From assembly GCF_006345805.1 (NCBI RefSeq), contig NW_021835789.1, positions 1-38,270 of the forward strand: a stretch of 38,270 bases of DNA, given 5' to 3'. The notes beneath the pieces are model-generated. The model made no database searches and was not told the origin of the DNA. It was given only the letters and a program-made list of their open reading frames with translations. Position numbers and translations under genes: made by a program. Shown piece by piece: positions 2,825 through 34,016 of the stretch (position 1 is the first letter of the stretch; every line of letters starts with the position of its first letter). This stretch comes from Octopus sinensis. Its lineage: Eukaryota.

Positions 2825-3313
2825 TCTCTTTTACTCTCTTTCACTTGTTTCAGTCATTTGACCGTGGACATGCTGGAGCACCACCTTTAGTCGAGCAAAT
2901 CGACCCCCCCCCCCCAGGACTTATTCTTTGTAAGCATAGTACTTATTCGATCGGTCTCTTTTACCGAACCGCCAAGTTACGGGGACGTAAACAAACCAGC
3001 ATCGGTTGTCAAGCGATGCTGGGGAGGACAAACACAGACACGCAAACATATGCACACACACACACGCCTACATACATACGTACATATATATCTATATGTG
3101 TGTGTGTGTGCGTGTGTGTGTGTGTGTTATGTATGTATATGTATATATATATTATATATACGACGGGCTTCTTTCAGTTTCCGTCTACCAAAGCCACTCA
3201 CAAGACTTCGGTCGGCCCGAGGCTATTCTAGAAGACACTTGCCCAAGATGTCACGGAGTGGGTCTGAACCCGGAACCATGTGGTTGGTAAGCAAGCTAAT
3301 TACCACACAGCCA
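2825..3313 (-). mobile_element. tRNA-headed SINE group A with internal (CA/TA)n
   Basis: Reverse complement reads TGGCTGTGTGGTAA...GGTTCAGACCC (A/B-box-like) through a tail ...GACTGAAACAAGTGAAAGAG. Matches the copy at 5973-6385. Confidence 0.9.
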
Positions 3314-5972: not shown

Positions 5973-6385
5973 GGCGCAGAAGTGGCTGTGTGGTAAGTAG
6001 CTTGTTTACCAACCACATGGTTCCGGGTTTAGTCCCACTGCGTGGCACCTTGAGCAAGTGTCTTCTACTATAGCCTCGGGTCGACCAAAGCCTTGTGAGT
6101 GGATTTGGTAGACGGAAACTGAAAGAAGCCGTCGTATATATGTATATATATATGTGCGTGTGTGTGTTTGTGTGTCTGTCTTTGTCCCTCTAGCATTGCT
6201 TGACAACCGATGCTGGTGTGCTTATGTCCCCGTTACTTAGCGGTTCGGCAAAAGAGACCGATATAATAAGTACTGGGCTTACAAAAGAATAAGTCCCGGG
6301 GTCGAGTTGCTCGATTAAAGGCGGTGCTCCAGCATGGCCGCAGTCAAATGACTGAAACAAGTAAAAGAGTAAAAGAGTAAAGAGT
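5973..6385 (+). mobile_element. Full-length SINE group A
   Basis: Head GGCGCAGAAGTGGCTGTGTGGTAAG, B-box-like GGTTTAGTCCC, tail (GTAAAAGA)n. Confidence 0.9.
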
Positions 6386-8826: not shown

Positions 8827-9023
8827 TTCTTTTATTGTTTTACTTGTTTCAGTCATTTGACTACGGCCATGCTGGAGCATCACCTTTCGTCGAACAAATC
8901 CACCCCAGGACTTCTTTGTAAGCCTATCAGTTCCTTTTTGCTGAACCACTAAGTTACAGAGACGTGAATTCTCCAACATCGGTTGTCAAGCGATGGTGCA
9001 TGGGGACCAACACCGACATAGAA

Positions 9024-9618: not shown

Positions 9619-10342
9619 ATATATATATATATATATGCAAAAATACATGCATACATACGTACATACATACATACATACATACATACATACATGTATACAT
9701 ACATATAAAAATAATATATACAATACCTTTACACGTGCATATGCAAACACATACATATATATATGTTTGTGTGTGTGAGCATATCTATGTATGTATTTAT
9801 ATAATTAAACACACACATAGTGGTCAATATCGAAATACACAGAACACATAAAAACAAACATCAGCAAATAAATAACCTATCAAACAATAAACAAACAAAC
9901 AAAATAAATAAACGAATAAATAAATAAATAAATAAAATGTAAAGGTCAGGTGTGAATCAAATCCGAAGTCTACGAGCTGACGCCTAGCAGCATTAAATTA
10001 TTGAAACGGTTTGACTATCATTCGTCACACCTCAGTAATTCGAACCACTGACTTGATCAACCTTTACCATACCTCCTACTGATCTATCAAATTTAAGATC
10101 CTTGGCTTCGTTTGTGTTATTTATGTTTTATCTTTCAGCCTAATCTCTAATTGGTTTCCAAAATCATTATTAACTTATTAACATAATGTAACCAATCCTT
10201 CCAATTTTACTCAGACAATCACTCGCGATAATCACCGTGATAATCTAATGATCTCTGGTTAATTTCTTTATATTACATTCCATCCTATATTTTTGTTCCT
10301 CCTTATTGGTTACTGGAATTGGTGAATAATGTATATATATAT

Positions 10343-10376
<34 letters not shown>

Positions 10377-10379
10377 AGT

Positions 10380-10680
10380 ATTTGAGTAGTTGAATGAATT
10401 ATCTTATTATGGATAATTCGAATTAACCGATACCTGGGTAGCAAATTCACATCAGAAAAAACACGGTTGAAGTTACGTGCCTAGGGCATAGATTACGTGC
10501 TTTCGTGTGGAAATTTGTATGTTTATTTTAAAAATATAAATATATGAAAGAATGGAGTTGAACGACGAATTAACAAAATTCCTTTATTTTCGACATATGT
10601 TTCGAAGGCTGCATATTCCTAATTGCGAAGGAATGAGGAGTACATTATGCCGCTTTCTCATCAGGAAAAGCAAGGAACTT
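10380..10680 (-). mobile_element. Penelope-like terminal repeat, diverged relative of the 32.4-33.9 kb unit
   Basis: TTAACCGATACCT...AGCAAA..TCAC and GAATGGAGTTGAACGA...TTTCGAA.GG blocks align with 33375-33575. Carries an HHR motif. Confidence 0.65.
10587..10669 (-). ncRNA. Type I hammerhead ribozyme motif
   Basis: UUUUC-CUGAUGA-stem II (GAAAGCGGCAUA/UAUGCAGCCUUC)-GAAA-CAUAUGUC-GAAAA. Intact core with a GUC site at 10592. Confidence 0.8.
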
Positions 10681-10684
10681 ATAA

Positions 10685-10733
<49 letters not shown>

Positions 10734-23753: not shown

Positions 23754-24103
23754 TACGTGTATGTGTATGTATATCTATGTGTGTCCTTGTGTCTTTGTTT
23801 GAGTCCCCACCACTACTTGACAACCGGTGATGTGTTTGCCTCCCCATATCTTAGCAGGTTCAATCCTACTGCGTGGCACCTTGGGCAAGTGTATTCTACT
23901 ATAGCTTACAAAGAATAAGTCCTAAGGTCGATTTGTTCAACTAAAGGCGGTGCTCCAGCATGGGCGCAGTCAAATGACTGAAACAAGTAAAAGAGTAATA
24001 TTGAGCTATATAACAATATAACATTGAATGAGTATGAAGGACTTGTTGAATAAAAAAAGGAATAAAAAATGGGTCCATCGGTAAAAAGGGTTGAGAAACA
24101 TTG
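23356..24103. mobile_element. hAT-type MITE relic interrupted by SINE A copies (about 23459-23998)
   Basis: Left CAGTGGTTCTACTC and right GGTTGAGAAACATTG are TIR-like. The flanking 8-mers match only 5/8. Confidence 0.55.
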
Positions 24104-28563: not shown

Positions 28564-28635
28564 CTCCCCGGCGGGGAATCGAACTCCGGTCTCCCGCGTG
28601 ACGGGCGGGGATACTTACCACTATACTACCGAGGA
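28564..28635 (-). tRNA. tRNA-Asp-GTC: tRNA-Asp(GTC) copy, probably a retroposed pseudogene
   Basis: 72 nt TCCTCGGTAGTATAGTGG...GTTCGATTCCCCGCCGGGGAG. Cloverleaf with anticodon GTC at 28602-28600. U33 is C, and there is one T-stem A-C mismatch. Confidence 0.92.
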
Positions 28636-28844
28636 TCAGAATGGAGAAGTACCATCAGAGCTACCAGCTTGGAGATAACGAGTATAAATCTGTCGTCAGA
28701 TTTTCGTTCGATACAATCAAAAGTAGTTCATCGGAAGAGCCGTTGAAGCGTCACGTAGAAAGACTCGTGATATTTGTTTTGACTTAGTGTACTTGAAGTT
28801 TCAATGGGATTGAGCCCAACACTCTGATCACCACTGGTATCACT

Positions 28845-29431
28845 TTTACATTACCAGCAGCCATATTCCTACCGCTCTATGTAACGCTGGTGAGACCCAT
28901 ATTGGAGTACGGGATTCAAGCCTCTTCTCCCTATCTCCTCAAAGACATACTGCATCTCGAAAGAGTCCAGAAGCTGGCTACCCACATGGTTCATGGTCTC
29001 AAGAATTTGTCATATGAAGAAAGGCTGAAGACGCTCGACCTTTATTCTCTAGAAAAACGACGACGCCGTGGAGATCTCATTCTTGCTCACAACATCATAA
29101 GCGGAAAGTGTAACCTCTCGAAAGTGCTGTTCTTCACTCCTGCTCCAGAGCGTCGGCTGCGGGGTCATTCCGAAAAGCTCTATCTGCGACGATTTCATCT
29201 CAATCGAAGAGAGGGTCTTTCTCCGTCCGGGTTGCGGATCCGTGGAATAAGCTGCCAGACGAGATGGTGAAGATGCCGACGACCGCTCGGTTCAAAGTCT
29301 CCCTTGACCTCAAGTGGCCTGAACTCTTTACATGAACATCACCCTGTACATAACTCCATGTCCCCCTACATGGCCTTGCTTTTTGCTTTTTGAGCCAAAA
29401 AGTTAACTAACTAACTTAACTAACTAACTAA
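28845..29431 (+). mobile_element. CR1-clade LINE 3' fragment (ORF2 C-terminus, 3' UTR and (CTAA)n tail)
   Basis: LVRPILEYGIQASSPYL.KDI..LERVQKLAT...LSYEERLKTLDLYSLEKRRRRGDLI is the classic CR1 post-RT region. A frameshift is present near 29220. Confidence 0.93.
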
Positions 29432-31400: not shown

Positions 31401-31996
31401 CTCCTCCAGTACTGTTCTGATTTTGTCTACAGAATTCATATTTTTCCCATCCAAATAATTTTGAAGACTGCGGAATAAATGATAATCAGACGGGCATTGT
31501 CCGGCCCATATGGTTGATGGGGCATCGTTTCCCATTCAAACAGATCCAACCTCTGGAATATCATCCTCGCTGTATATGGCCAAGCATTATCCTGATGGAA
31601 GAACCTTTCGTCTTGAAACCAAAGATGATTGTTTTTCTTCTAGGGCTTACTTGAATGGCTGGTTGAATGACCAAGTCCAAACTTCTCTGCTAGCTTCTCA
31701 ACAGTTACGATGGCATTTTGTTCCACCAGGGTTTGCAGGACATCCTCATCAAGTTCTACAGATCTTCCAGGACGAGGTTCGTCTTTTAGGATGTAGTTTC
31801 AGGCTCGGAATTTCTGGGACCACCGTTGACACTGGCCTACATTTATTGCCCGCTCTCCATACACTGCATTAATATTCCTCGCACTTTCCGTTGTGTTGTT
31901 GCCGTTATTGAACACATAAAACAAAATATACCGAATATGCTCCTTTGTCACTTCTATTATAGCATTGTATATGTAACTGTTAAAATCGAACTGCAC
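31401..31996 (-). mobile_element. Internally deleted mariner transposase
   Basis: EVTKEHIRYILFYVFNNGNNTTESARNINAVYGE...DEPRPGR (HTH region) is fused to FHQDNAW..HQPYGPDNA/SDYHLFRSLQNYL. The WVPHEL and first-Asp region is missing. Confidence 0.9.
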
Positions 31997-32326
31997 TCTT
32001 CAAAACTTGCACTAAGAATAAGTACGAGGTAAAATTACTACCTGTAGTTATAGCAAGCTGATGCAGGTACTATATCCTGTCCCGTCTGACTTTCAGTTCA
32101 TGCAGTTGAAAAAAACTGCATTATATATGGGATGACTTAATGTATATGTATATGACCCTATGCAGTCCTGTGTAGGACACTGGGAATCACCAAGCAAAGA
32201 AAATCACCAGGGTCTAGCAGCATATTACTAATTCGTCTATCACACAAACATTCTATCACACAAACACACACACCACCACACACACACACACCACCACACA
32301 CACATATATATAAAATATATATATAT

Positions 32327-32358
<32 letters not shown>

Positions 32359-32414
32359 ATGGTGAATTGAAGAAATGGAGATGAACGAAGACGAAGATTG
32401 AACAGAAATCGTTT

Positions 32415-32508
32415 TATTTCATTCTACACGTGTTTCGAAAGGCACAATTTACCAAAATCCGATTGAATAATGAGACCATATTGTGTCTTTCTCTTCAGGG
32501 AGAAATAG
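32415..32508 (-). ncRNA. Type I hammerhead ribozyme motif, copy 1
   Basis: CUGAAGA (32498-32492), long stem II, GAAACACGUGUA, GUA site at 32425. Confidence 0.78.
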
Positions 32509-32874
32509 GAAATCCGTTGTAAAAAACAAAAACAGAACAGAGGCGGAGCAAAACAAATCGAACTAGGCTCCTAAGAGCCCATGGCAAAACTGATTATCAG
32601 TGTATGTTGAGAACCGGTGGCTGAAGATTTAACGGTCAGGCAGCGGTCAATCATGTGGGTGAGGTGTGAGATGTTCTTTGTGAGAACTTTATTCTCGTCA
32701 CAAAGAACATCTACACACCCTCACCCACATGATTGACCGCTGCTGACCCGTTAAAATCTTCACCACCGGTTCTCAACATACACTGATAATCAGTTTTGCC
32801 ATGGGCTCTTAGGAGCCTAGTTCGATTTGTTTTGCTCCGCCTCTGTTCTTTTTTGTTTTTTCCAACGGATTTCC

Positions 32875-32965
32875 TATTTCTCCTGAAGAGAAAGACACAA
32901 TATGGTCTCATTATTCATCGGATTTTGGTAAATTGTGCCTTTCGAAACACGTGTAGAATGAAATA
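32875..32965 (+). ncRNA. Type I hammerhead ribozyme motif, copy 2
   Basis: UAUUUCUC-CUGAAGA (32883-32889)-GAAAGACACAAU/AUUGUGCCUUUC-GAAA-CACGUGUA-GAAUGAAAUA. Site at 32955. Confidence 0.82.
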
Positions 32966-33227
32966 AAACGATTTCTGTTTAATCTTCGTTCAGCTCCATT
33001 TCTTCAATTCACCATTAATATTTTAATTTCAATTATCCGCACCAACGCACGGTTGCCCAACATATGGTTGTACTCCAACCGTGCTGTTTTCTGCTGTGAT
33101 TTTTGCTACCAAGGTATCGGTTAAACTTTTGATTAATCTGCTCTCAAGATTATTCATCTTTCTATTTCACATAATATATATAATATAATACATATATATA
33201 TATATATAATATATATATATATATATG

Positions 33228-33258
<31 letters not shown>

Positions 33259-33269
33259 ATATATATATA

Positions 33270-33342
<73 letters not shown>

Positions 33343-33546
33343 TGAAATAGAAAGATGAATAATCTTGTTGCAGATTAATCAAAAGTTTAACCGATACCTT
33401 GGGAGCAAAAATCACAGCAGAAGACAGCACGGTTGGAGGTACAACCATATGGTGTTGCAACCGTGCGTTGGTGCGGATAATTGAATTTTAATATTATTAG
33501 TGAATTGAAGAAATGGAGTTGAACGAAGATTGAACAGAAATCGTTT

Positions 33547-33639
33547 TATTGCATTCTACACGTGTTTCGAAAGGTACAATTTACCAAATTCCGATTGAAT
33601 AAGGAGACCATATTGTGTCTTTCTCTTCAGGAAGAAACA
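33547..33639 (-). ncRNA. Type I hammerhead ribozyme motif, copy 3
   Basis: CUGAAGA (33630-33624), GAAACACGUGUA, site at 33557. Confidence 0.75.
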
Positions 33640-33754
33640 GGAAATCCGTTGGAAAAAACAAAAACAGAACAGTTTGGCCATGGGCTCTTAGGAGCCTCGT
33701 TCGATTTGTTTTGCTCCGCCTCTGTTCTGTTTTTGTTTTTTCCAACGGATTTCC

Positions 33755-33847
33755 TATTTCTCCTGAAGAGAAAGGACACAATATGGTCTCCTTATTCAAT
33801 CGGAATTTGGTAAATTGTGCCTTTCGAAACACGTGTAGAATGCAATA
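33755..33847 (+). ncRNA. Type I hammerhead ribozyme motif, copy 4
   Basis: CUGAAGA (33763-33769), GAAA (33826-33829), site at 33837. Confidence 0.8.
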
Positions 33848-33898
33848 AAACGATTTCTGTTCAATTTTCGTTCAACTCCATTCTTCAATTCACTAATA

Positions 33899-33929
<31 letters not shown>

Positions 33930-33930
33930 C

Positions 33931-34016
<86 letters not shown>

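What the first reader, a model, noticed from the sequence alone, without database searches (positions are those of the whole stretch)
32358..33900. Four hammerhead ribozymes in an alternating inverted array (triple overlapping palindrome)
Seen: four copies of one unit run -/+/(TA)n/-/+. Copies 1 and 2 are head-to-head around a short hairpin (32669-32712). Copies 2 and 3 are tail-to-tail around about 170 bp of (TA)n. Copies 3 and 4 are head-to-head with a deletion. Every copy keeps CUGAAGA, a 12-bp stem II, GAAA and a GUA site. Established: Penelope-like elements carry type I HHRs in their terminal repeats and often have inverted termini, and metazoan non-LTR retrozymes are usually direct tandem repeats. 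Inference: this is a non-autonomous PLE-derived array with two HHRs on each strand. Transcription from either strand could release a defined RNA (plus: cuts at 32955 and 33837, about 880 nt; minus: cuts at 33557 and 32425, about 1130 nt) that folds into long dsRNA. It may be a circular-RNA or siRNA source, or a trace of template switching by PLE reverse transcriptase.
Basis: partly seen in the sequence, partly recalled or inferred. Interest (0 to 1): 0.85.

Follow-up and report, generated by a model that had tools for sequence, protein, structure and literature searches.

The report
Hammerhead-ribozyme retroelement copies, inverted pairs
Four decaying copies of a small octopus retroelement that carries a hammerhead self-cleaving RNA motif sit as two back-to-back inverted pairs inside a (TA)n microsatellite; this layout is the known insertion signature of Penelope-like retroelements, so it is a new family member, not a new kind of system.

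Summary
Four copies of one unit lie -/+/(TA)165/-/+ at 32357-33902, and each keeps a complete type I hammerhead (HHR) core at the stated cut sites. A fifth, 64-68% identical solo copy at 10377-10685(-) was missed. It is also embedded in (TA)n and gives the key test. All 15 constrained core bases are kept, the only two differences fall on the two free positions (N7, H17), helix II has 3 compensatory pairs, and the helix III box changes ACACGUGU to ACAUAUGU, staying a perfect palindrome as dimer-acting metazoan HHRs require. Rfam RF00163 aligns end to end but below threshold (25.5 and 12.5 vs 34 bits) because helix II carries a 50-nt insert. The host is an octopus, a lineage with active Penelope-like elements (PLEs). 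An adjacent inverted 5'-truncated copy, (TA)n targeting and a one-sided tail are published PLE signatures. Shared variants group c1+c2 against c3+c4, so I read the array as two separate inverted-pair insertions in one (TA)n tract. This is a by-product of integration, not a designed ribozyme array. In read-through RNA the HHR cores are buried in hairpins of -300 to -540 kcal/mol, so the proposed clean release of 882/1132-nt RNAs is doubtful. No RT/GIY-YIG gene is in the window, and cleavage is untested. Verdict: new member of a known kind, modest interest.

The parts
32304..32358 (.). Left flanking (TA)n microsatellite (target tract), preceded by (CA)n/(CACCAC)n at 32236-32304
   Evidence: TRF; sequence
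32357..32690 (-). Copy 1: short arm of inverted pair 1. Unit positions about 9-340. Its 3' end stops inside the unit's first TA-rich patch (CACCATTA|TATATA).
32415..32507 (-). Hammerhead of copy 1 (CUGAAGA at 32498-32492; predicted cut between 32425 and 32424). Core intact, extra bulged C in helix I.
32683..32696 (.). Centre of palindrome 1: 14 nt not mirrored. GAGAA/TTCTC can still pair, leaving a 5-nt loop CTTTA plus a 3-nt indel.
32691..33170 (+). Copy 2: long arm of pair 1. Head (about 190 nt) + hammerhead + 215 nt after the cut site, including the about 140-nt 3' extension (33029-33170) that abuts (TA)n.
32875..32965 (+). Hammerhead of copy 2. Helix I 32875-32882/32956-32965 (2+6 bp with AU bulge), CUGAAGA 32883-32889, helix II 32890-32901/32933-32944, GAAA 32945-32948, helix III box ACACGUGU 32948-32955. 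Predicted cut after A32955.
33174..33338 (.). Central (TA)n, 165 bp, between the two 3' ends (tail-to-tail)
33340..33672 (-). Copy 3: long arm of pair 2 (unit positions 154-481), with the 3' extension at 33340-33484
33547..33639 (-). Hammerhead of copy 3 (CUGAAGA 33630-33624; predicted cut between 33557 and 33556). Core intact, two adjacent mismatches in helix II.
33670..33672 (.). CAG microhomology at the asymmetric head-to-head junction of pair 2
33670..33902 (+). Copy 4: short arm of pair 2 (unit positions 102-about 340). Its 3' end stops in the same TA-rich patch (CACTAATAATAT|ATATA).
33755..33847 (+). Hammerhead of copy 4 (CUGAAGA 33763-33769; predicted cut after A33837). Core intact, G insertion gives 12 bp + bulged A in helix II, helix I weakened by A>C.
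33899..34016 (.). Right flanking (TA)n microsatellite
10377..10685 (-). Copy 5: old solo copy of a sister subfamily (64-68% identical), hammerhead + full 3' region, no inverted partner. Flanked by (TA)n at 10332-10375 and 10686-10729.
10576..10680 (-). Hammerhead of copy 5. Helix I is 5+9 bp with a 2x2 internal loop. CUGAUGA at 10664-10658, helix III box ACAUAUGU, GUC site, predicted cut between 10592 and 10591. Best Rfam RF00163 match (25.5 bits).

Best explanation
These are genomic copies of a short hammerhead-bearing retroelement family of an octopus. It is either the 3'-terminal (pseudo-LTR) part of a Penelope-like element (PLE) or a non-autonomous relative mobilised by PLE machinery.

The unit reads 5'-head (about 190 nt), then a type I hammerhead (about 95 nt), then about 215 nt of 3' region. 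It integrates into (TA)n microsatellites.

The hammerhead is the metazoan dimer-dependent type. Helix III has only 2 bp with a palindromic ACGU/AUAU loop, so two ribozymes must pair through an 8-nt palindrome to be active. It differs in having an unusually long helix II (12 bp plus a distal extension of about 30 nt). In the element's own RNA it would serve to trim longer-than-unit transcripts, as proposed for PLEs and retrozymes.

I infer that the 'array' is not a device. It looks like two separate integration events into one (TA)n tract, in opposite orientations. Each event produced an inverted pair whose arms were identical at birth. This could happen by reverse transcription primed on both nicked target strands, or by snap-back of the first cDNA.

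In each pair one arm starts at the RNA's 3' end (long arm). The other starts, or was joined, at an internal TA-rich patch about 140 nt upstream (short arm), with microhomology to the (TA)n target.

The copies have since drifted by about 2-3% per arm and show no sign of present function.

Shown: the anatomy, motif integrity, covariation, (TA)n context, grouping of variants, and host.
Inferred: the PLE dependence, the two-event history, and the priming mechanism.
Untested: self-cleavage.
For: HHR identity:
- The complete core occurs in all 5 copies.
- Between copy 2 and copy 5 (64% identical overall) all 15 constrained core positions are identical. The only two differences fall on N7 and H17, the two free positions (P about 1e-3 to 2e-4).
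- On the explicit HHR structure 90% of cells pair, against 25-47% for slid partners. Four pairs changed on both sides (3 in helix II, 1 in the helix III palindrome, CG>UA), against 0 in all slid controls.
- RNAalifold finds helix II unaided.
- RF00163 aligns over model positions 1-45 at 25.5 bits, E=1.4e-4 (copy 5) and 12.5 bits (copy 2). The only large penalty is a 50-nt helix II insert.
- There were 0 of 300 shuffles with a strict descriptor hit.
- Dimer cofolds pair the 8-nt palindrome and gain 7-11 kcal/mol.

PLE-type insertion:
- Published signatures are 5'-truncation, an inverted 5'-truncated copy immediately adjacent, a tail at one end only, (TA)n as preferred target (Naiad, and the HHR-bearing Hydra clade, which occurs in molluscs), and an HHR near the 3' end (PMC8557442).
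- Dual HHRs 100-700 bp apart on opposite strands have already been reported (PMC4209133).
- A PLE protein cleaves and extends both target strands and initiates at internal RNA sites (PMC11167929).
- All three insertion events here lie in (TA)n, which makes up 2.7% of the window.

Two events:
- 5-6 sites group c1c2 against c3c4, 0 group c1c4 against c2c3, and there are about 3 private changes per copy (hand-curated).
- Both short arms end inside the same TA-rich patch.

Host:
- A neighbouring RT remnant is 90% identical to an Octopus vulgaris protein on GCA_951406725.2.
- O. vulgaris has 31 recently active PLE families (PMC13282606).
Against: - No RT or GIY-YIG remnant lies in the 38-kb window. 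No homology to a known PLE terminus could be tested, because no consensus library was available and the Craig 2021 supplements are not held.
- Rfam's gathering score is not reached.
- Covariation rests on one diverged relative only. No further copies were found in 41 kb of other octopus DNA, in two metagenome scans or in a protein-space search.
- The one-sided extension is about 140 nt, not the 30-40 nt typical of PLE tails.
- The c1c2|c3c4 grouping could also arise by arm-to-arm gene conversion after a single inverted duplication.
- Zero substitutions in the 60 core positions of the four young copies is not significant (about 1.8 expected), so there is no evidence of selection at this locus.
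- PLE hammerheads cleave poorly in vitro (PMC4209133).
Confidence: 0.7

Rival explanations
1. There was a single insertion (one inverted pair or even one copy), followed by host-driven palindromic duplication. The central (TA)n, itself a perfect palindrome, formed a hairpin or cruciform. Fold-back replication or template switching then mirrored the neighbouring element. Later arm-to-arm gene conversion homogenised each small palindrome, and a centre deletion trimmed pair 2.
For: The whole block 32357-33902 is mirror-symmetric about the (TA)n centre, including the long 3' regions. Long (TA)n tracts and palindromes are known hot spots for such rearrangements (own knowledge). The CAG microhomology at 33670-33672 fits a centre deletion.
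Against: A plain mirror duplication predicts c2 closest to c3 and c1 closest to c4. The count is 0 such sites against 5-6 grouping c1c2|c3c4, so extra gene conversion must be assumed. The model does not explain why pair 1 itself is inverted, or why both short arms end in the same internal TA-rich patch, unless pair 1 pre-existed. The PLE-type mechanism explains the inverted pairs without added steps (PMC8557442, PMC11167929).
Confidence: 0.15
2. The unit is a foldback or MITE-like DNA transposon that targets TA dinucleotides, possibly mobilised by the mariner-type elements common in this genome. The hammerhead-like motif would be incidental.
For: Each pair looks like an element with about 330-bp terminal inverted repeats sitting in TA-rich DNA. 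A mariner-like remnant (HTH_48, E=1e-16) lies just upstream at 31439-31999. Target-site duplications cannot be read in (TA)n.
Against: Copy 5 is a solo, non-palindromic copy with the same hammerhead + 3' region and no terminal inverted repeats. The arms of each pair are unequal by 140 nt at their outer ends. There is no sequence similarity between the array and the mariner remnant. The core conservation and compensatory changes across 64-68% identity argue that the RNA motif is a selected feature of the family.
Confidence: 0.05
3. One reading: the inverted array is a working locus. Transcription of either strand yields ribozyme-delimited RNAs (882 nt plus strand, 1132 nt minus strand) that fold into long dsRNA and feed siRNA/piRNA or circular-RNA pathways.
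For: Two same-sense hammerheads with intact cores lie on each strand at the stated spacing. The products would be 92-94% base-paired. Tandem type I hammerheads do yield circRNAs in other invertebrates (PMC7229834).
Against: The same pairing buries the hammerhead cores in duplexes of -300 to -840 kcal/mol in read-through RNA. Helix III has only 2 bp, so a free partner ribozyme is needed (PMC4209133). There is no evidence of a promoter, expression or selection. The copies are drifting, with weakened helices in c3 and c4. The arrangement is explained by the insertion mechanism alone.
Confidence: 0.07
4. Assembly artefact: the palindromes were produced by chimeric fold-back reads or by mis-joining of repeat copies.
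For: PLE inverted/tandem structures and long (TA)n tracts are known to trouble assemblers (PMC8557442).
Against: The arms differ by 4-10%, including substitutions, a 6-bp duplication, single-base indels and an asymmetric junction. A fold-back read artefact would give near-identical arms. The differences are phylogenetically structured.
Confidence: 0.03

Closest known systems
Hammerhead ribozymes in the pseudo-LTRs / 3' ends of Penelope-like elements, and PLE 'complex tandem/inverted insertions' (Cervera & de la Pena 2014, PMC4209133; Craig et al. 2021, PMC8557442)
   Same: A type I HHR near the element's 3' end. Palindromic helix III implying dimeric action. Mostly truncated copies spread through the genome. 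Pairs of HHRs 100-700 bp apart on opposite strands. An inverted 5'-truncated copy abutting the main copy. An extension present at one end only. Insertion into (TA)n (Naiad, Hydra clades). Host lineage with PLEs.
   Different: No RT/GIY-YIG ORF here, and no tested homology to a PLE terminus. The HHR is not the 'minimal' PLE type: it has a real 2-bp helix III with a tetraloop and no unpaired base between A9 and G10.1. Helix II is much longer (12 bp + about 30-nt extension, against 6-8 bp). The one-sided extension is about 140 nt, not 30-40 nt.
Metazoan non-LTR retrozymes (Cervera & de la Pena 2020, PMC7229834; Li, Clavereau & Pollet 2026 preprint, doi 10.64898/2026.07.22.740005)
   Same: A short (300-480 nt), AT-rich (34-39% GC), non-coding unit with one canonical-style type I HHR whose helix III is 2 bp + a palindromic tetraloop ('similar to invertebrate HHRs'). 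Proposed dependence on PLE machinery.
   Different: Retrozymes are defined by head-to-tail tandem repeats that give unit-length circRNAs. Here there is no direct tandem at all. Copies are solo (copy 5) or inverted pairs, and same-sense HHRs are separated by an antisense copy.
Rfam RF00163 Hammerhead_1 (Schistosoma, newt, cricket satellite-type HHRs)
   Same: Full-length alignment to the model with every core position matching. Helix III is modelled as the same 8-nt palindrome.
   Different: Scores of 25.5 and 12.5 bits are below the 34-bit gathering score. Helix II carries 50 nt where the model expects about 10. Helix I has a bulge or internal loop.
Twin priming / two-strand target-primed reverse transcription (L1 inversions, own knowledge; PLE protein extending both strands in vitro, Frangieh et al. 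2024, PMC11167929)
   Same: Head-to-head inverted cDNA copies with 3' ends facing outward, junction microhomology (CAG), and two alternative initiation sites on the RNA.
   Different: L1 twin priming inverts non-overlapping parts of one RNA. Here both arms cover the same part of the unit, which needs two template copies or snap-back. Nothing here was observed directly; it is an inference from the footprints.

Membership tests
Hammerhead ribozyme, type I (metazoan, dimer-dependent) | Catalytic core C3-U4-G5-A6-N7-G8-A9, G12-A13-A14, A15.1-U16.1, H17 not G | tested here: met
   All five copies have it. N7 is A or U and H17 is A or C. The 15 constrained positions are identical across 64% overall identity.
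Hammerhead ribozyme, type I (metazoan, dimer-dependent) | Three helices around the core with helix I open (type I), and a G10.1-C11.1 closing pair | tested here: met
   Helix II is 12 bp with G-C closing. Helix I is 2+6 bp (young copies) or 5+9 bp (copy 5). 90% of cells pair against 25-47% for slid partners, and there are 3 compensatory pairs in helix II.
Hammerhead ribozyme, type I (metazoan, dimer-dependent) | Helix III of 1-2 bp capped by a 2-4 nt palindromic loop, allowing an intermolecular extended helix III | tested here: met
   A-U and C-G pairs plus loop ACGU (young copies) or AUAU (copy 5). The 8-mer stays self-complementary through a CG>UA double change. Cofolds pair it. Feature as defined in PMC4209133.
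Hammerhead ribozyme, type I (metazoan, dimer-dependent) | Score at or above the Rfam RF00163 gathering threshold (34 bits) | tested here: not met
   No hit at gathering threshold or at E<=10 in 1.6 kb. Scores were 25.5 bits (copy 5) and 12.5 bits (copy 2) when only about 120 nt was searched. The shortfall comes from a 50-nt insert in helix II.
Hammerhead ribozyme, type I (metazoan, dimer-dependent) | Helix I / helix II tertiary contacts | tested here: inconclusive
   Helix I has a bulge or internal loop, and helix II has a conserved irregularity 4-7 bp from the core in all copies. The canonical loop1-loop2 geometry cannot apply with a 12-bp helix II.
Hammerhead ribozyme, type I (metazoan, dimer-dependent) | Self-cleavage at the predicted site | not testable with these tools
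   Needs in vitro transcription of monomer, dimer and extended-helix-III constructs.
Penelope-like element (terminal region / pLTR fragment or non-autonomous derivative) | Single ORF with PLE-type RT and GIY-YIG endonuclease in the element | tested here: not met
   No RT motif C or GIY-YIG pattern in context, and no Pfam hit in ORFs near the array. The unit's frames gave no protein relatives. This is expected for truncated or non-autonomous copies, but it leaves membership unproven.
Penelope-like element (terminal region / pLTR fragment or non-autonomous derivative) | HHR located in the terminal repeat, near the 3' end | tested here: met
   The cut site lies about 215 nt from the 3' end in copies 2, 3 and 5.
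Penelope-like element (terminal region / pLTR fragment or non-autonomous derivative) | 5'-truncated copies with an inverted 5'-truncated copy immediately adjacent | tested here: met
   Seen twice: c1|c2 and c3|c4. Feature as described in PMC8557442.
Penelope-like element (terminal region / pLTR fragment or non-autonomous derivative) | Microsatellite, especially (TA)n, insertion bias (Naiad, Hydra clades) | tested here: met
   All three events lie in (TA)n, and perfect (TA)>=8 tracts make up 2.7% of the window.
Penelope-like element (terminal region / pLTR fragment or non-autonomous derivative) | Short 'tail' extension at only one end of the insertion unit | tested here: inconclusive
   Each pair has exactly one arm with extra 3' sequence, but it is about 140 nt against the published 30-40 nt (PMC8557442, PMC11167929).
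Penelope-like element (terminal region / pLTR fragment or non-autonomous derivative) | Sequence homology of the unit to the terminus of an autonomous PLE of the same genome | not testable with these tools
   No Repbase/Dfam or octopus repeat library was available. The supplements of PMC8557442 are not held.
Metazoan non-LTR retrozyme | Head-to-tail tandem repeats (150-450 bp monomers), each with a type I HHR | tested here: not met
   There is no direct tandem. Copies are inverted or solo, and same-sense HHRs lie 882 and 1132 nt apart with an antisense copy between them.
Metazoan non-LTR retrozyme | Non-coding, low-GC (<45%) unit expressed as circRNA | tested here: inconclusive
   GC is 39% (copy 2) and 34% (copy 5), and there is no credible ORF. 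Expression and circularity are not testable here.
MITE / foldback DNA transposon | Terminal inverted repeats on every copy plus target-site duplication | tested here: not met
   Copy 5 has no terminal inverted repeats. The arms of the pairs are unequal. Target-site duplications are unreadable in (TA)n.

The most novel reading that the evidence does not exclude
The inverted pairs are not inert scars. They would be a strand-symmetric trap locus: either strand gives ribozyme-delimited, almost fully double-stranded RNA carrying both senses of the element. That RNA would be processed into small RNAs that silence the active hammerhead-bearing PLE/retrozyme family. This would mean a retroelement's own integration mechanism routinely builds its silencing triggers.

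A milder version is also open. The one-long/one-short inverted pair may be the regular in vivo product of a dimeric PLE enzyme priming on both strands of (TA)n from two RNA sites 140 nt apart. That would be a natural footprint of the two-strand extension so far seen only in vitro.
Probability: 0.06. Interest if true: 0.7.

Novelty: new member of a known kind. Interest (0 to 1): 0.35.

Why it matters
**Annotation.** This appears to be an undescribed hammerhead-bearing repeat family in a cephalopod. The searchable literature holds no report of cephalopod hammerheads. Its 50-nt helix II insert makes it invisible to Rfam at normal thresholds, so such ribozymes are probably under-counted in mollusc genomes.

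**Mechanism.** Two independent events show the same long-arm/short-arm inverted pair, with the junctions inside a TA-rich patch. This is a clean natural footprint that could be compared with the two-strand cleavage/extension and internal initiation recently shown for a PLE enzyme in vitro.

**Limits.** The locus adds no new principle. Type I hammerheads in PLE-related repeats, opposite-strand HHR pairs, inverted adjacent copies and (TA)n targeting are all published.

Tried and rejected
- **Rfam at gathering threshold and at E<=10 over the block.** There was no hammerhead hit. The strong 'miRNA precursor' hits (MIR8562, MIR862 and others) are generic responses to long perfect hairpins and were rejected.
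- **Collection scans.** Two metagenome pattern scans, one for the HHR and one for the conserved 3' blocks, gave 0 hits.
- **Protein-space search with a composite of the unit's five stop-to-stop translations.** It gave 0 hits, so no other copies and no full-length element could be recovered.
- **Exact look-ups of two ORFs overlapping the array.** They were not on record, so there is no independent assembly of the locus.
- **Octopus DNA sampling via neighbouring repeat ORFs.** This yielded only two loci (41 kb), with no family copy.
- **Supplements of Craig et al. 2021.** They are not held.
- **Conserved secondary structure in the 3' region.** It is not supported: the covariation term is unfavourable.
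- **My first strict HHR descriptor.** It caught only 2 of 5 real copies because it allowed no bulges. I used it only for the chance estimate.
- **MAFFT alignments.** They mis-register copy 4 and copy 2 around single-base indels, so I recounted the variant partitions by hand.
- **A mariner-MITE origin.** I considered and rejected it.
Full report
**1. What is in the sequence**

The block at 32357-33902 holds four copies of one unit in the order -/+/(TA)n/-/+.

- Copy 1 (32357-32690, -) and copy 2 (32691-33170, +) are head-to-head. Their palindrome runs almost to its centre. Only 14 nt (32683-32696) are not mirrored, and within those GAGAA/TTCTC can still pair around a 5-nt loop.
- Copies 2 and 3 (33340-33672, -) face each other by their 3' ends across 165 bp of (TA)n (33174-33338).
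- Copies 3 and 4 (33670-33902, +) are head-to-head, but asymmetrically. Copy 3 reaches back only to unit position 154 and copy 4 to position 102. The join shares the trinucleotide CAG.
- (TA)n also flanks the block on both sides (32304-32358 and 33899-34016).

The shorter copies stop inside the unit's first TA-rich patch (c1 CACCATTA|TATATA; c4 CACTAATAATAT|ATATA).

The predicted cuts (after 32955 and 33837 on the plus strand, at 33557 and 32425 on the minus strand) and the product lengths of 882 and 1132 nt are arithmetically correct.

**2. A fifth copy provides the test**

A blastn and nhmmer search of the window with the unit found one more copy, at 10377-10685 on the minus strand. It is 64-68% identical to the others. 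No further copies exist in the window.

Copy 5 is solo, with no inverted partner. It starts 16 nt upstream of its CUGAUGA box, runs through the full 3' region, and has (TA)n on both sides (10332-10375 and 10686-10729). Two things follow. The 3' region belongs to the unit. And the family was inserting into (TA)n long before the young copies arrived.

**3. Is the hammerhead real?**

- **Core.** All five copies have a complete core: C3-A9, G12-A14, A15.1-U16.1, H17, and the G10.1-C11.1 pair. Between copy 2 and copy 5 the background identity is 64%, yet all 15 constrained positions are identical. The only two differences (A/U at N7, A/C at H17) fall on the two positions a hammerhead leaves free. 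The rough probability is 1e-3 for the identities alone and 2e-4 with the two differences included.
- **Pairing and covariation.** I wrote out the hammerhead structure and counted pairs on an alignment of copies 1-3 and 5. In total 90% of cells pair, against 25-47% when the 3' partners are slid by 1-3 columns. Four pairs changed on both sides, against none in any slid control. Three of these are in helix II (A-U>G-C, A-U>U-A, U-A>A-U). RNAalifold predicts helix II on its own.
- **Helix III palindrome.** The fourth compensatory change is the most telling. The helix III box changes from ACACGUGU to ACAUAUGU. In a monomer the changed bases sit in the tetraloop and have no reason to co-vary. In a dimer they pair with each other. 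The box therefore stays a perfect 8-nt palindrome, which is the hallmark of metazoan type I hammerheads that work as dimers (PMC4209133). Cofolding two copies pairs this box and gains 7-11 kcal/mol over two monomers.
- **Helix I.** It differs in sequence but is kept in both lineages: 2+6 bp with an AU bulge in the young copies, and 5+9 bp with a 2x2 internal loop in copy 5.
- **Fold energy.** The hammerhead-constrained fold lies 4-5 kcal/mol above the unconstrained minimum in both. That is not unusual for a motif with an open core.
- **Rfam.** There was nothing at the gathering threshold and nothing at E<=10 over the 1.6-kb block. When only about 120 nt was searched, RF00163 aligned over its whole length. 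Copy 5 scored 25.5 bits (E=1.4e-4) and copy 2 scored 12.5 bits (E=2.7), against a threshold of 34. The single large penalty is a 50-nt insertion in helix II where the model expects about 10.
- **Chance.** A strict descriptor found no match in 300 dinucleotide shuffles of the window.

My reading is that this is a genuine type I hammerhead family with an unusually long helix II. Self-cleavage itself is untested. The evidence for selection comes from the family's history, not from this locus: among the four young copies zero core substitutions are seen where about 1.8 would be expected, which is not significant.

**4. Host and neighbours**

The window is eukaryotic and full of microsatellites and repeat debris.

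- A non-LTR RT C-terminal remnant at 28797-29332 is 90% identical to a protein labelled Octopus vulgaris. That protein lies on chromosome record OX597823.1 of GCA_951406725.2. The host is therefore an octopus.
- O. vulgaris is reported to carry Penelope-like elements, with 31 recently active families and an older burst (PMC13282606).
- No RT or GIY-YIG remnant is present in the window.
- The element just upstream (31439-31999, -) is a mariner-like remnant (HTH_48, E=1e-16). It has no similarity to the array.
- The family is not dense everywhere. Two unrelated O. vulgaris loci, 41 kb in all, hold no copy.

**5. How the arrangement arose**

I sorted the variable sites in the about 180 nt shared by all four young copies. 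This was done by hand, because MAFFT mis-registers two single-base indels.

| Grouping | Sites |
|---|---|
| c1+c2 against c3+c4 | 5-6 |
| c1+c4 against c2+c3 | 0 |
| c1+c3 against c2+c4 | 1 (an indel in a pyrimidine run) |
| Private to one copy | about 3 each |

The two arms of each head-to-head pair are therefore each other's closest relatives.

A simple mirror duplication of pair 1 about the (TA)n centre predicts the opposite (c2=c3, c1=c4). Retrotransposition of a ready-made palindromic master predicts the same. Either each pair was created on its own with identical arms, or arm-to-arm gene conversion has been at work.

- Insertions are strongly 5'-truncated.
- An extension is often present at only one end.
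- (TA)n is the preferred target of the Naiad clade and of the hammerhead-bearing Hydra clade, which occurs in molluscs (PMC8557442).
- Pairs of hammerheads 100-700 bp apart on opposite strands were noted in 2014 (PMC4209133).
- A purified PLE protein cleaves and extends both target strands, and it starts reverse transcription at internal RNA sites, which explains the one-sided tail (PMC11167929).

Both pairs here consist of one arm that begins at the unit's 3' end and one that begins about 140 nt upstream in a TA-rich patch. The join to (TA)n lies inside that patch. This fits either two initiation sites or a microhomology join to the target.

The asymmetric CAG junction of pair 2 has two possible origins. 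It may be the primary join of two incomplete cDNAs. It may instead be a later centre deletion of a palindrome like pair 1. I cannot tell which.

I infer two insertion events, in opposite orientation, in one (TA)n tract. The arms have since diverged by roughly 2-3% each.

**6. What the RNA would do**

Folding the read-through transcripts shows the obstacle. Pair 1 folds into a hairpin of -542 kcal/mol and pair 2 into one of -303 kcal/mol. The 882-nt and 1132-nt 'products' are 92-94% paired. In every case the CUGAAGA box lies inside the long duplex with its antisense partner.

The antisense copy is transcribed first and the palindrome zips up from its centre. The ribozyme fold (-10 to -20 kcal/mol) therefore has little chance.

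The 2-bp helix III also needs a second free ribozyme. PLE-type hammerheads cleave poorly even as designed dimers (PMC4209133).

An alternative pairing (copy 2 with copy 3) would free copies 1 and 4, but only as monomers. Clean release of defined RNAs is therefore doubtful. Long dsRNA is the more likely product if the locus is transcribed at all, and I have no evidence that it is.

**7. Comparison and verdict**

- **What it works like.** It works like the type I hammerheads of PLE termini and of metazoan retrozymes.
- **PLE membership.** It is supported by architecture (3'-proximal hammerhead, inverted adjacent copy, (TA)n target, one-sided extension). It is unproven by homology, and no ORF is present.
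- **Retrozyme membership.** It fails on the defining tandem arrangement.
- **Rfam membership.** It fails on score only.

The result is a new member of a known kind. It has two mildly notable points: a long helix II that hides it from standard annotation, and a tidy double example of the long-arm/short-arm inverted pair. The PLE-linked interpretation is largely sound. The functional extrapolation is weak.

Noticed in passing
window 10377-10685 (-), flanks 10332-10375 and 10686-10729: A fifth, old solo copy of the same hammerhead-bearing family (64-68% identical). It has canonical CUGAUGA and GUC sites and is embedded in (TA)n.
   Followed up: yes
window 28564-28635 (-): An intact-looking tRNA-Asp (GUC): Rfam 50 bits, and ARAGORN agrees. 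It lies about 160-230 bp upstream of a non-LTR RT remnant. It could be a real tRNA gene or the head of a tRNA-derived SINE.
   Followed up: partly
window 28797-29332 (+): C-terminal remnant of a CR1/jockey-like non-LTR reverse transcriptase. It is 90% identical to a protein labelled Octopus vulgaris on GCA_951406725.2, which identifies the host lineage. The accession and locus tag shown by the source (PKU43604.1, llap_6084) look mismatched with the organism label.
   Followed up: partly
window 31439-31999 (-): A mariner/Mos1-like transposase remnant with stops (HTH_48, E=1e-16, plus a DDE-region fragment 'FHQDNAWPYTARM'). It lies immediately upstream of the array and is unrelated to it in sequence.
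   Followed up: yes
window 2866-2898 (+), 6307-6339 (-), 8865-8897 (+), 23933-23962 (-): At least four copies of a SINE-like repeat whose spurious ORF reads '...LFQSFD.GHAGAPPL.EQ...'. It is probably a very abundant octopus family. Only two relatives were present in the protein collection.
   Followed up: partly
window 33029-33170 (+), 33340-33484 (-), 10383-10530 (-): The 3' region of the unit has sequence blocks that are strongly conserved across 64-68% identity: TCGTTCAACTCCATT, CAACCGTG, TTTGCTACC.AGGTATCGGTTAA, AAGAT.ATTCAT. No supported secondary structure was found. They may be the recognition site for the mobilising reverse transcriptase.
   Followed up: partly
window 32236-32358: A compound microsatellite, (CA)n/(CACCAC)n running directly into (TA)n, on the left edge of the array. 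The window as a whole is unusually rich in (TA)n, (CA)n and (TATG/TACA)n tracts; perfect (TA)>=8 tracts alone make up 2.7%.
   Followed up: no
window 32640-32743 and 33580-33814: High-scoring but sub-threshold Rfam 'miRNA precursor' matches (MIR862 at 63 bits, MIR8562 at 85 bits). They are caused solely by the long perfect palindromes, a reminder that such hits on inverted repeats are not evidence of miRNA genes.
   Followed up: yes
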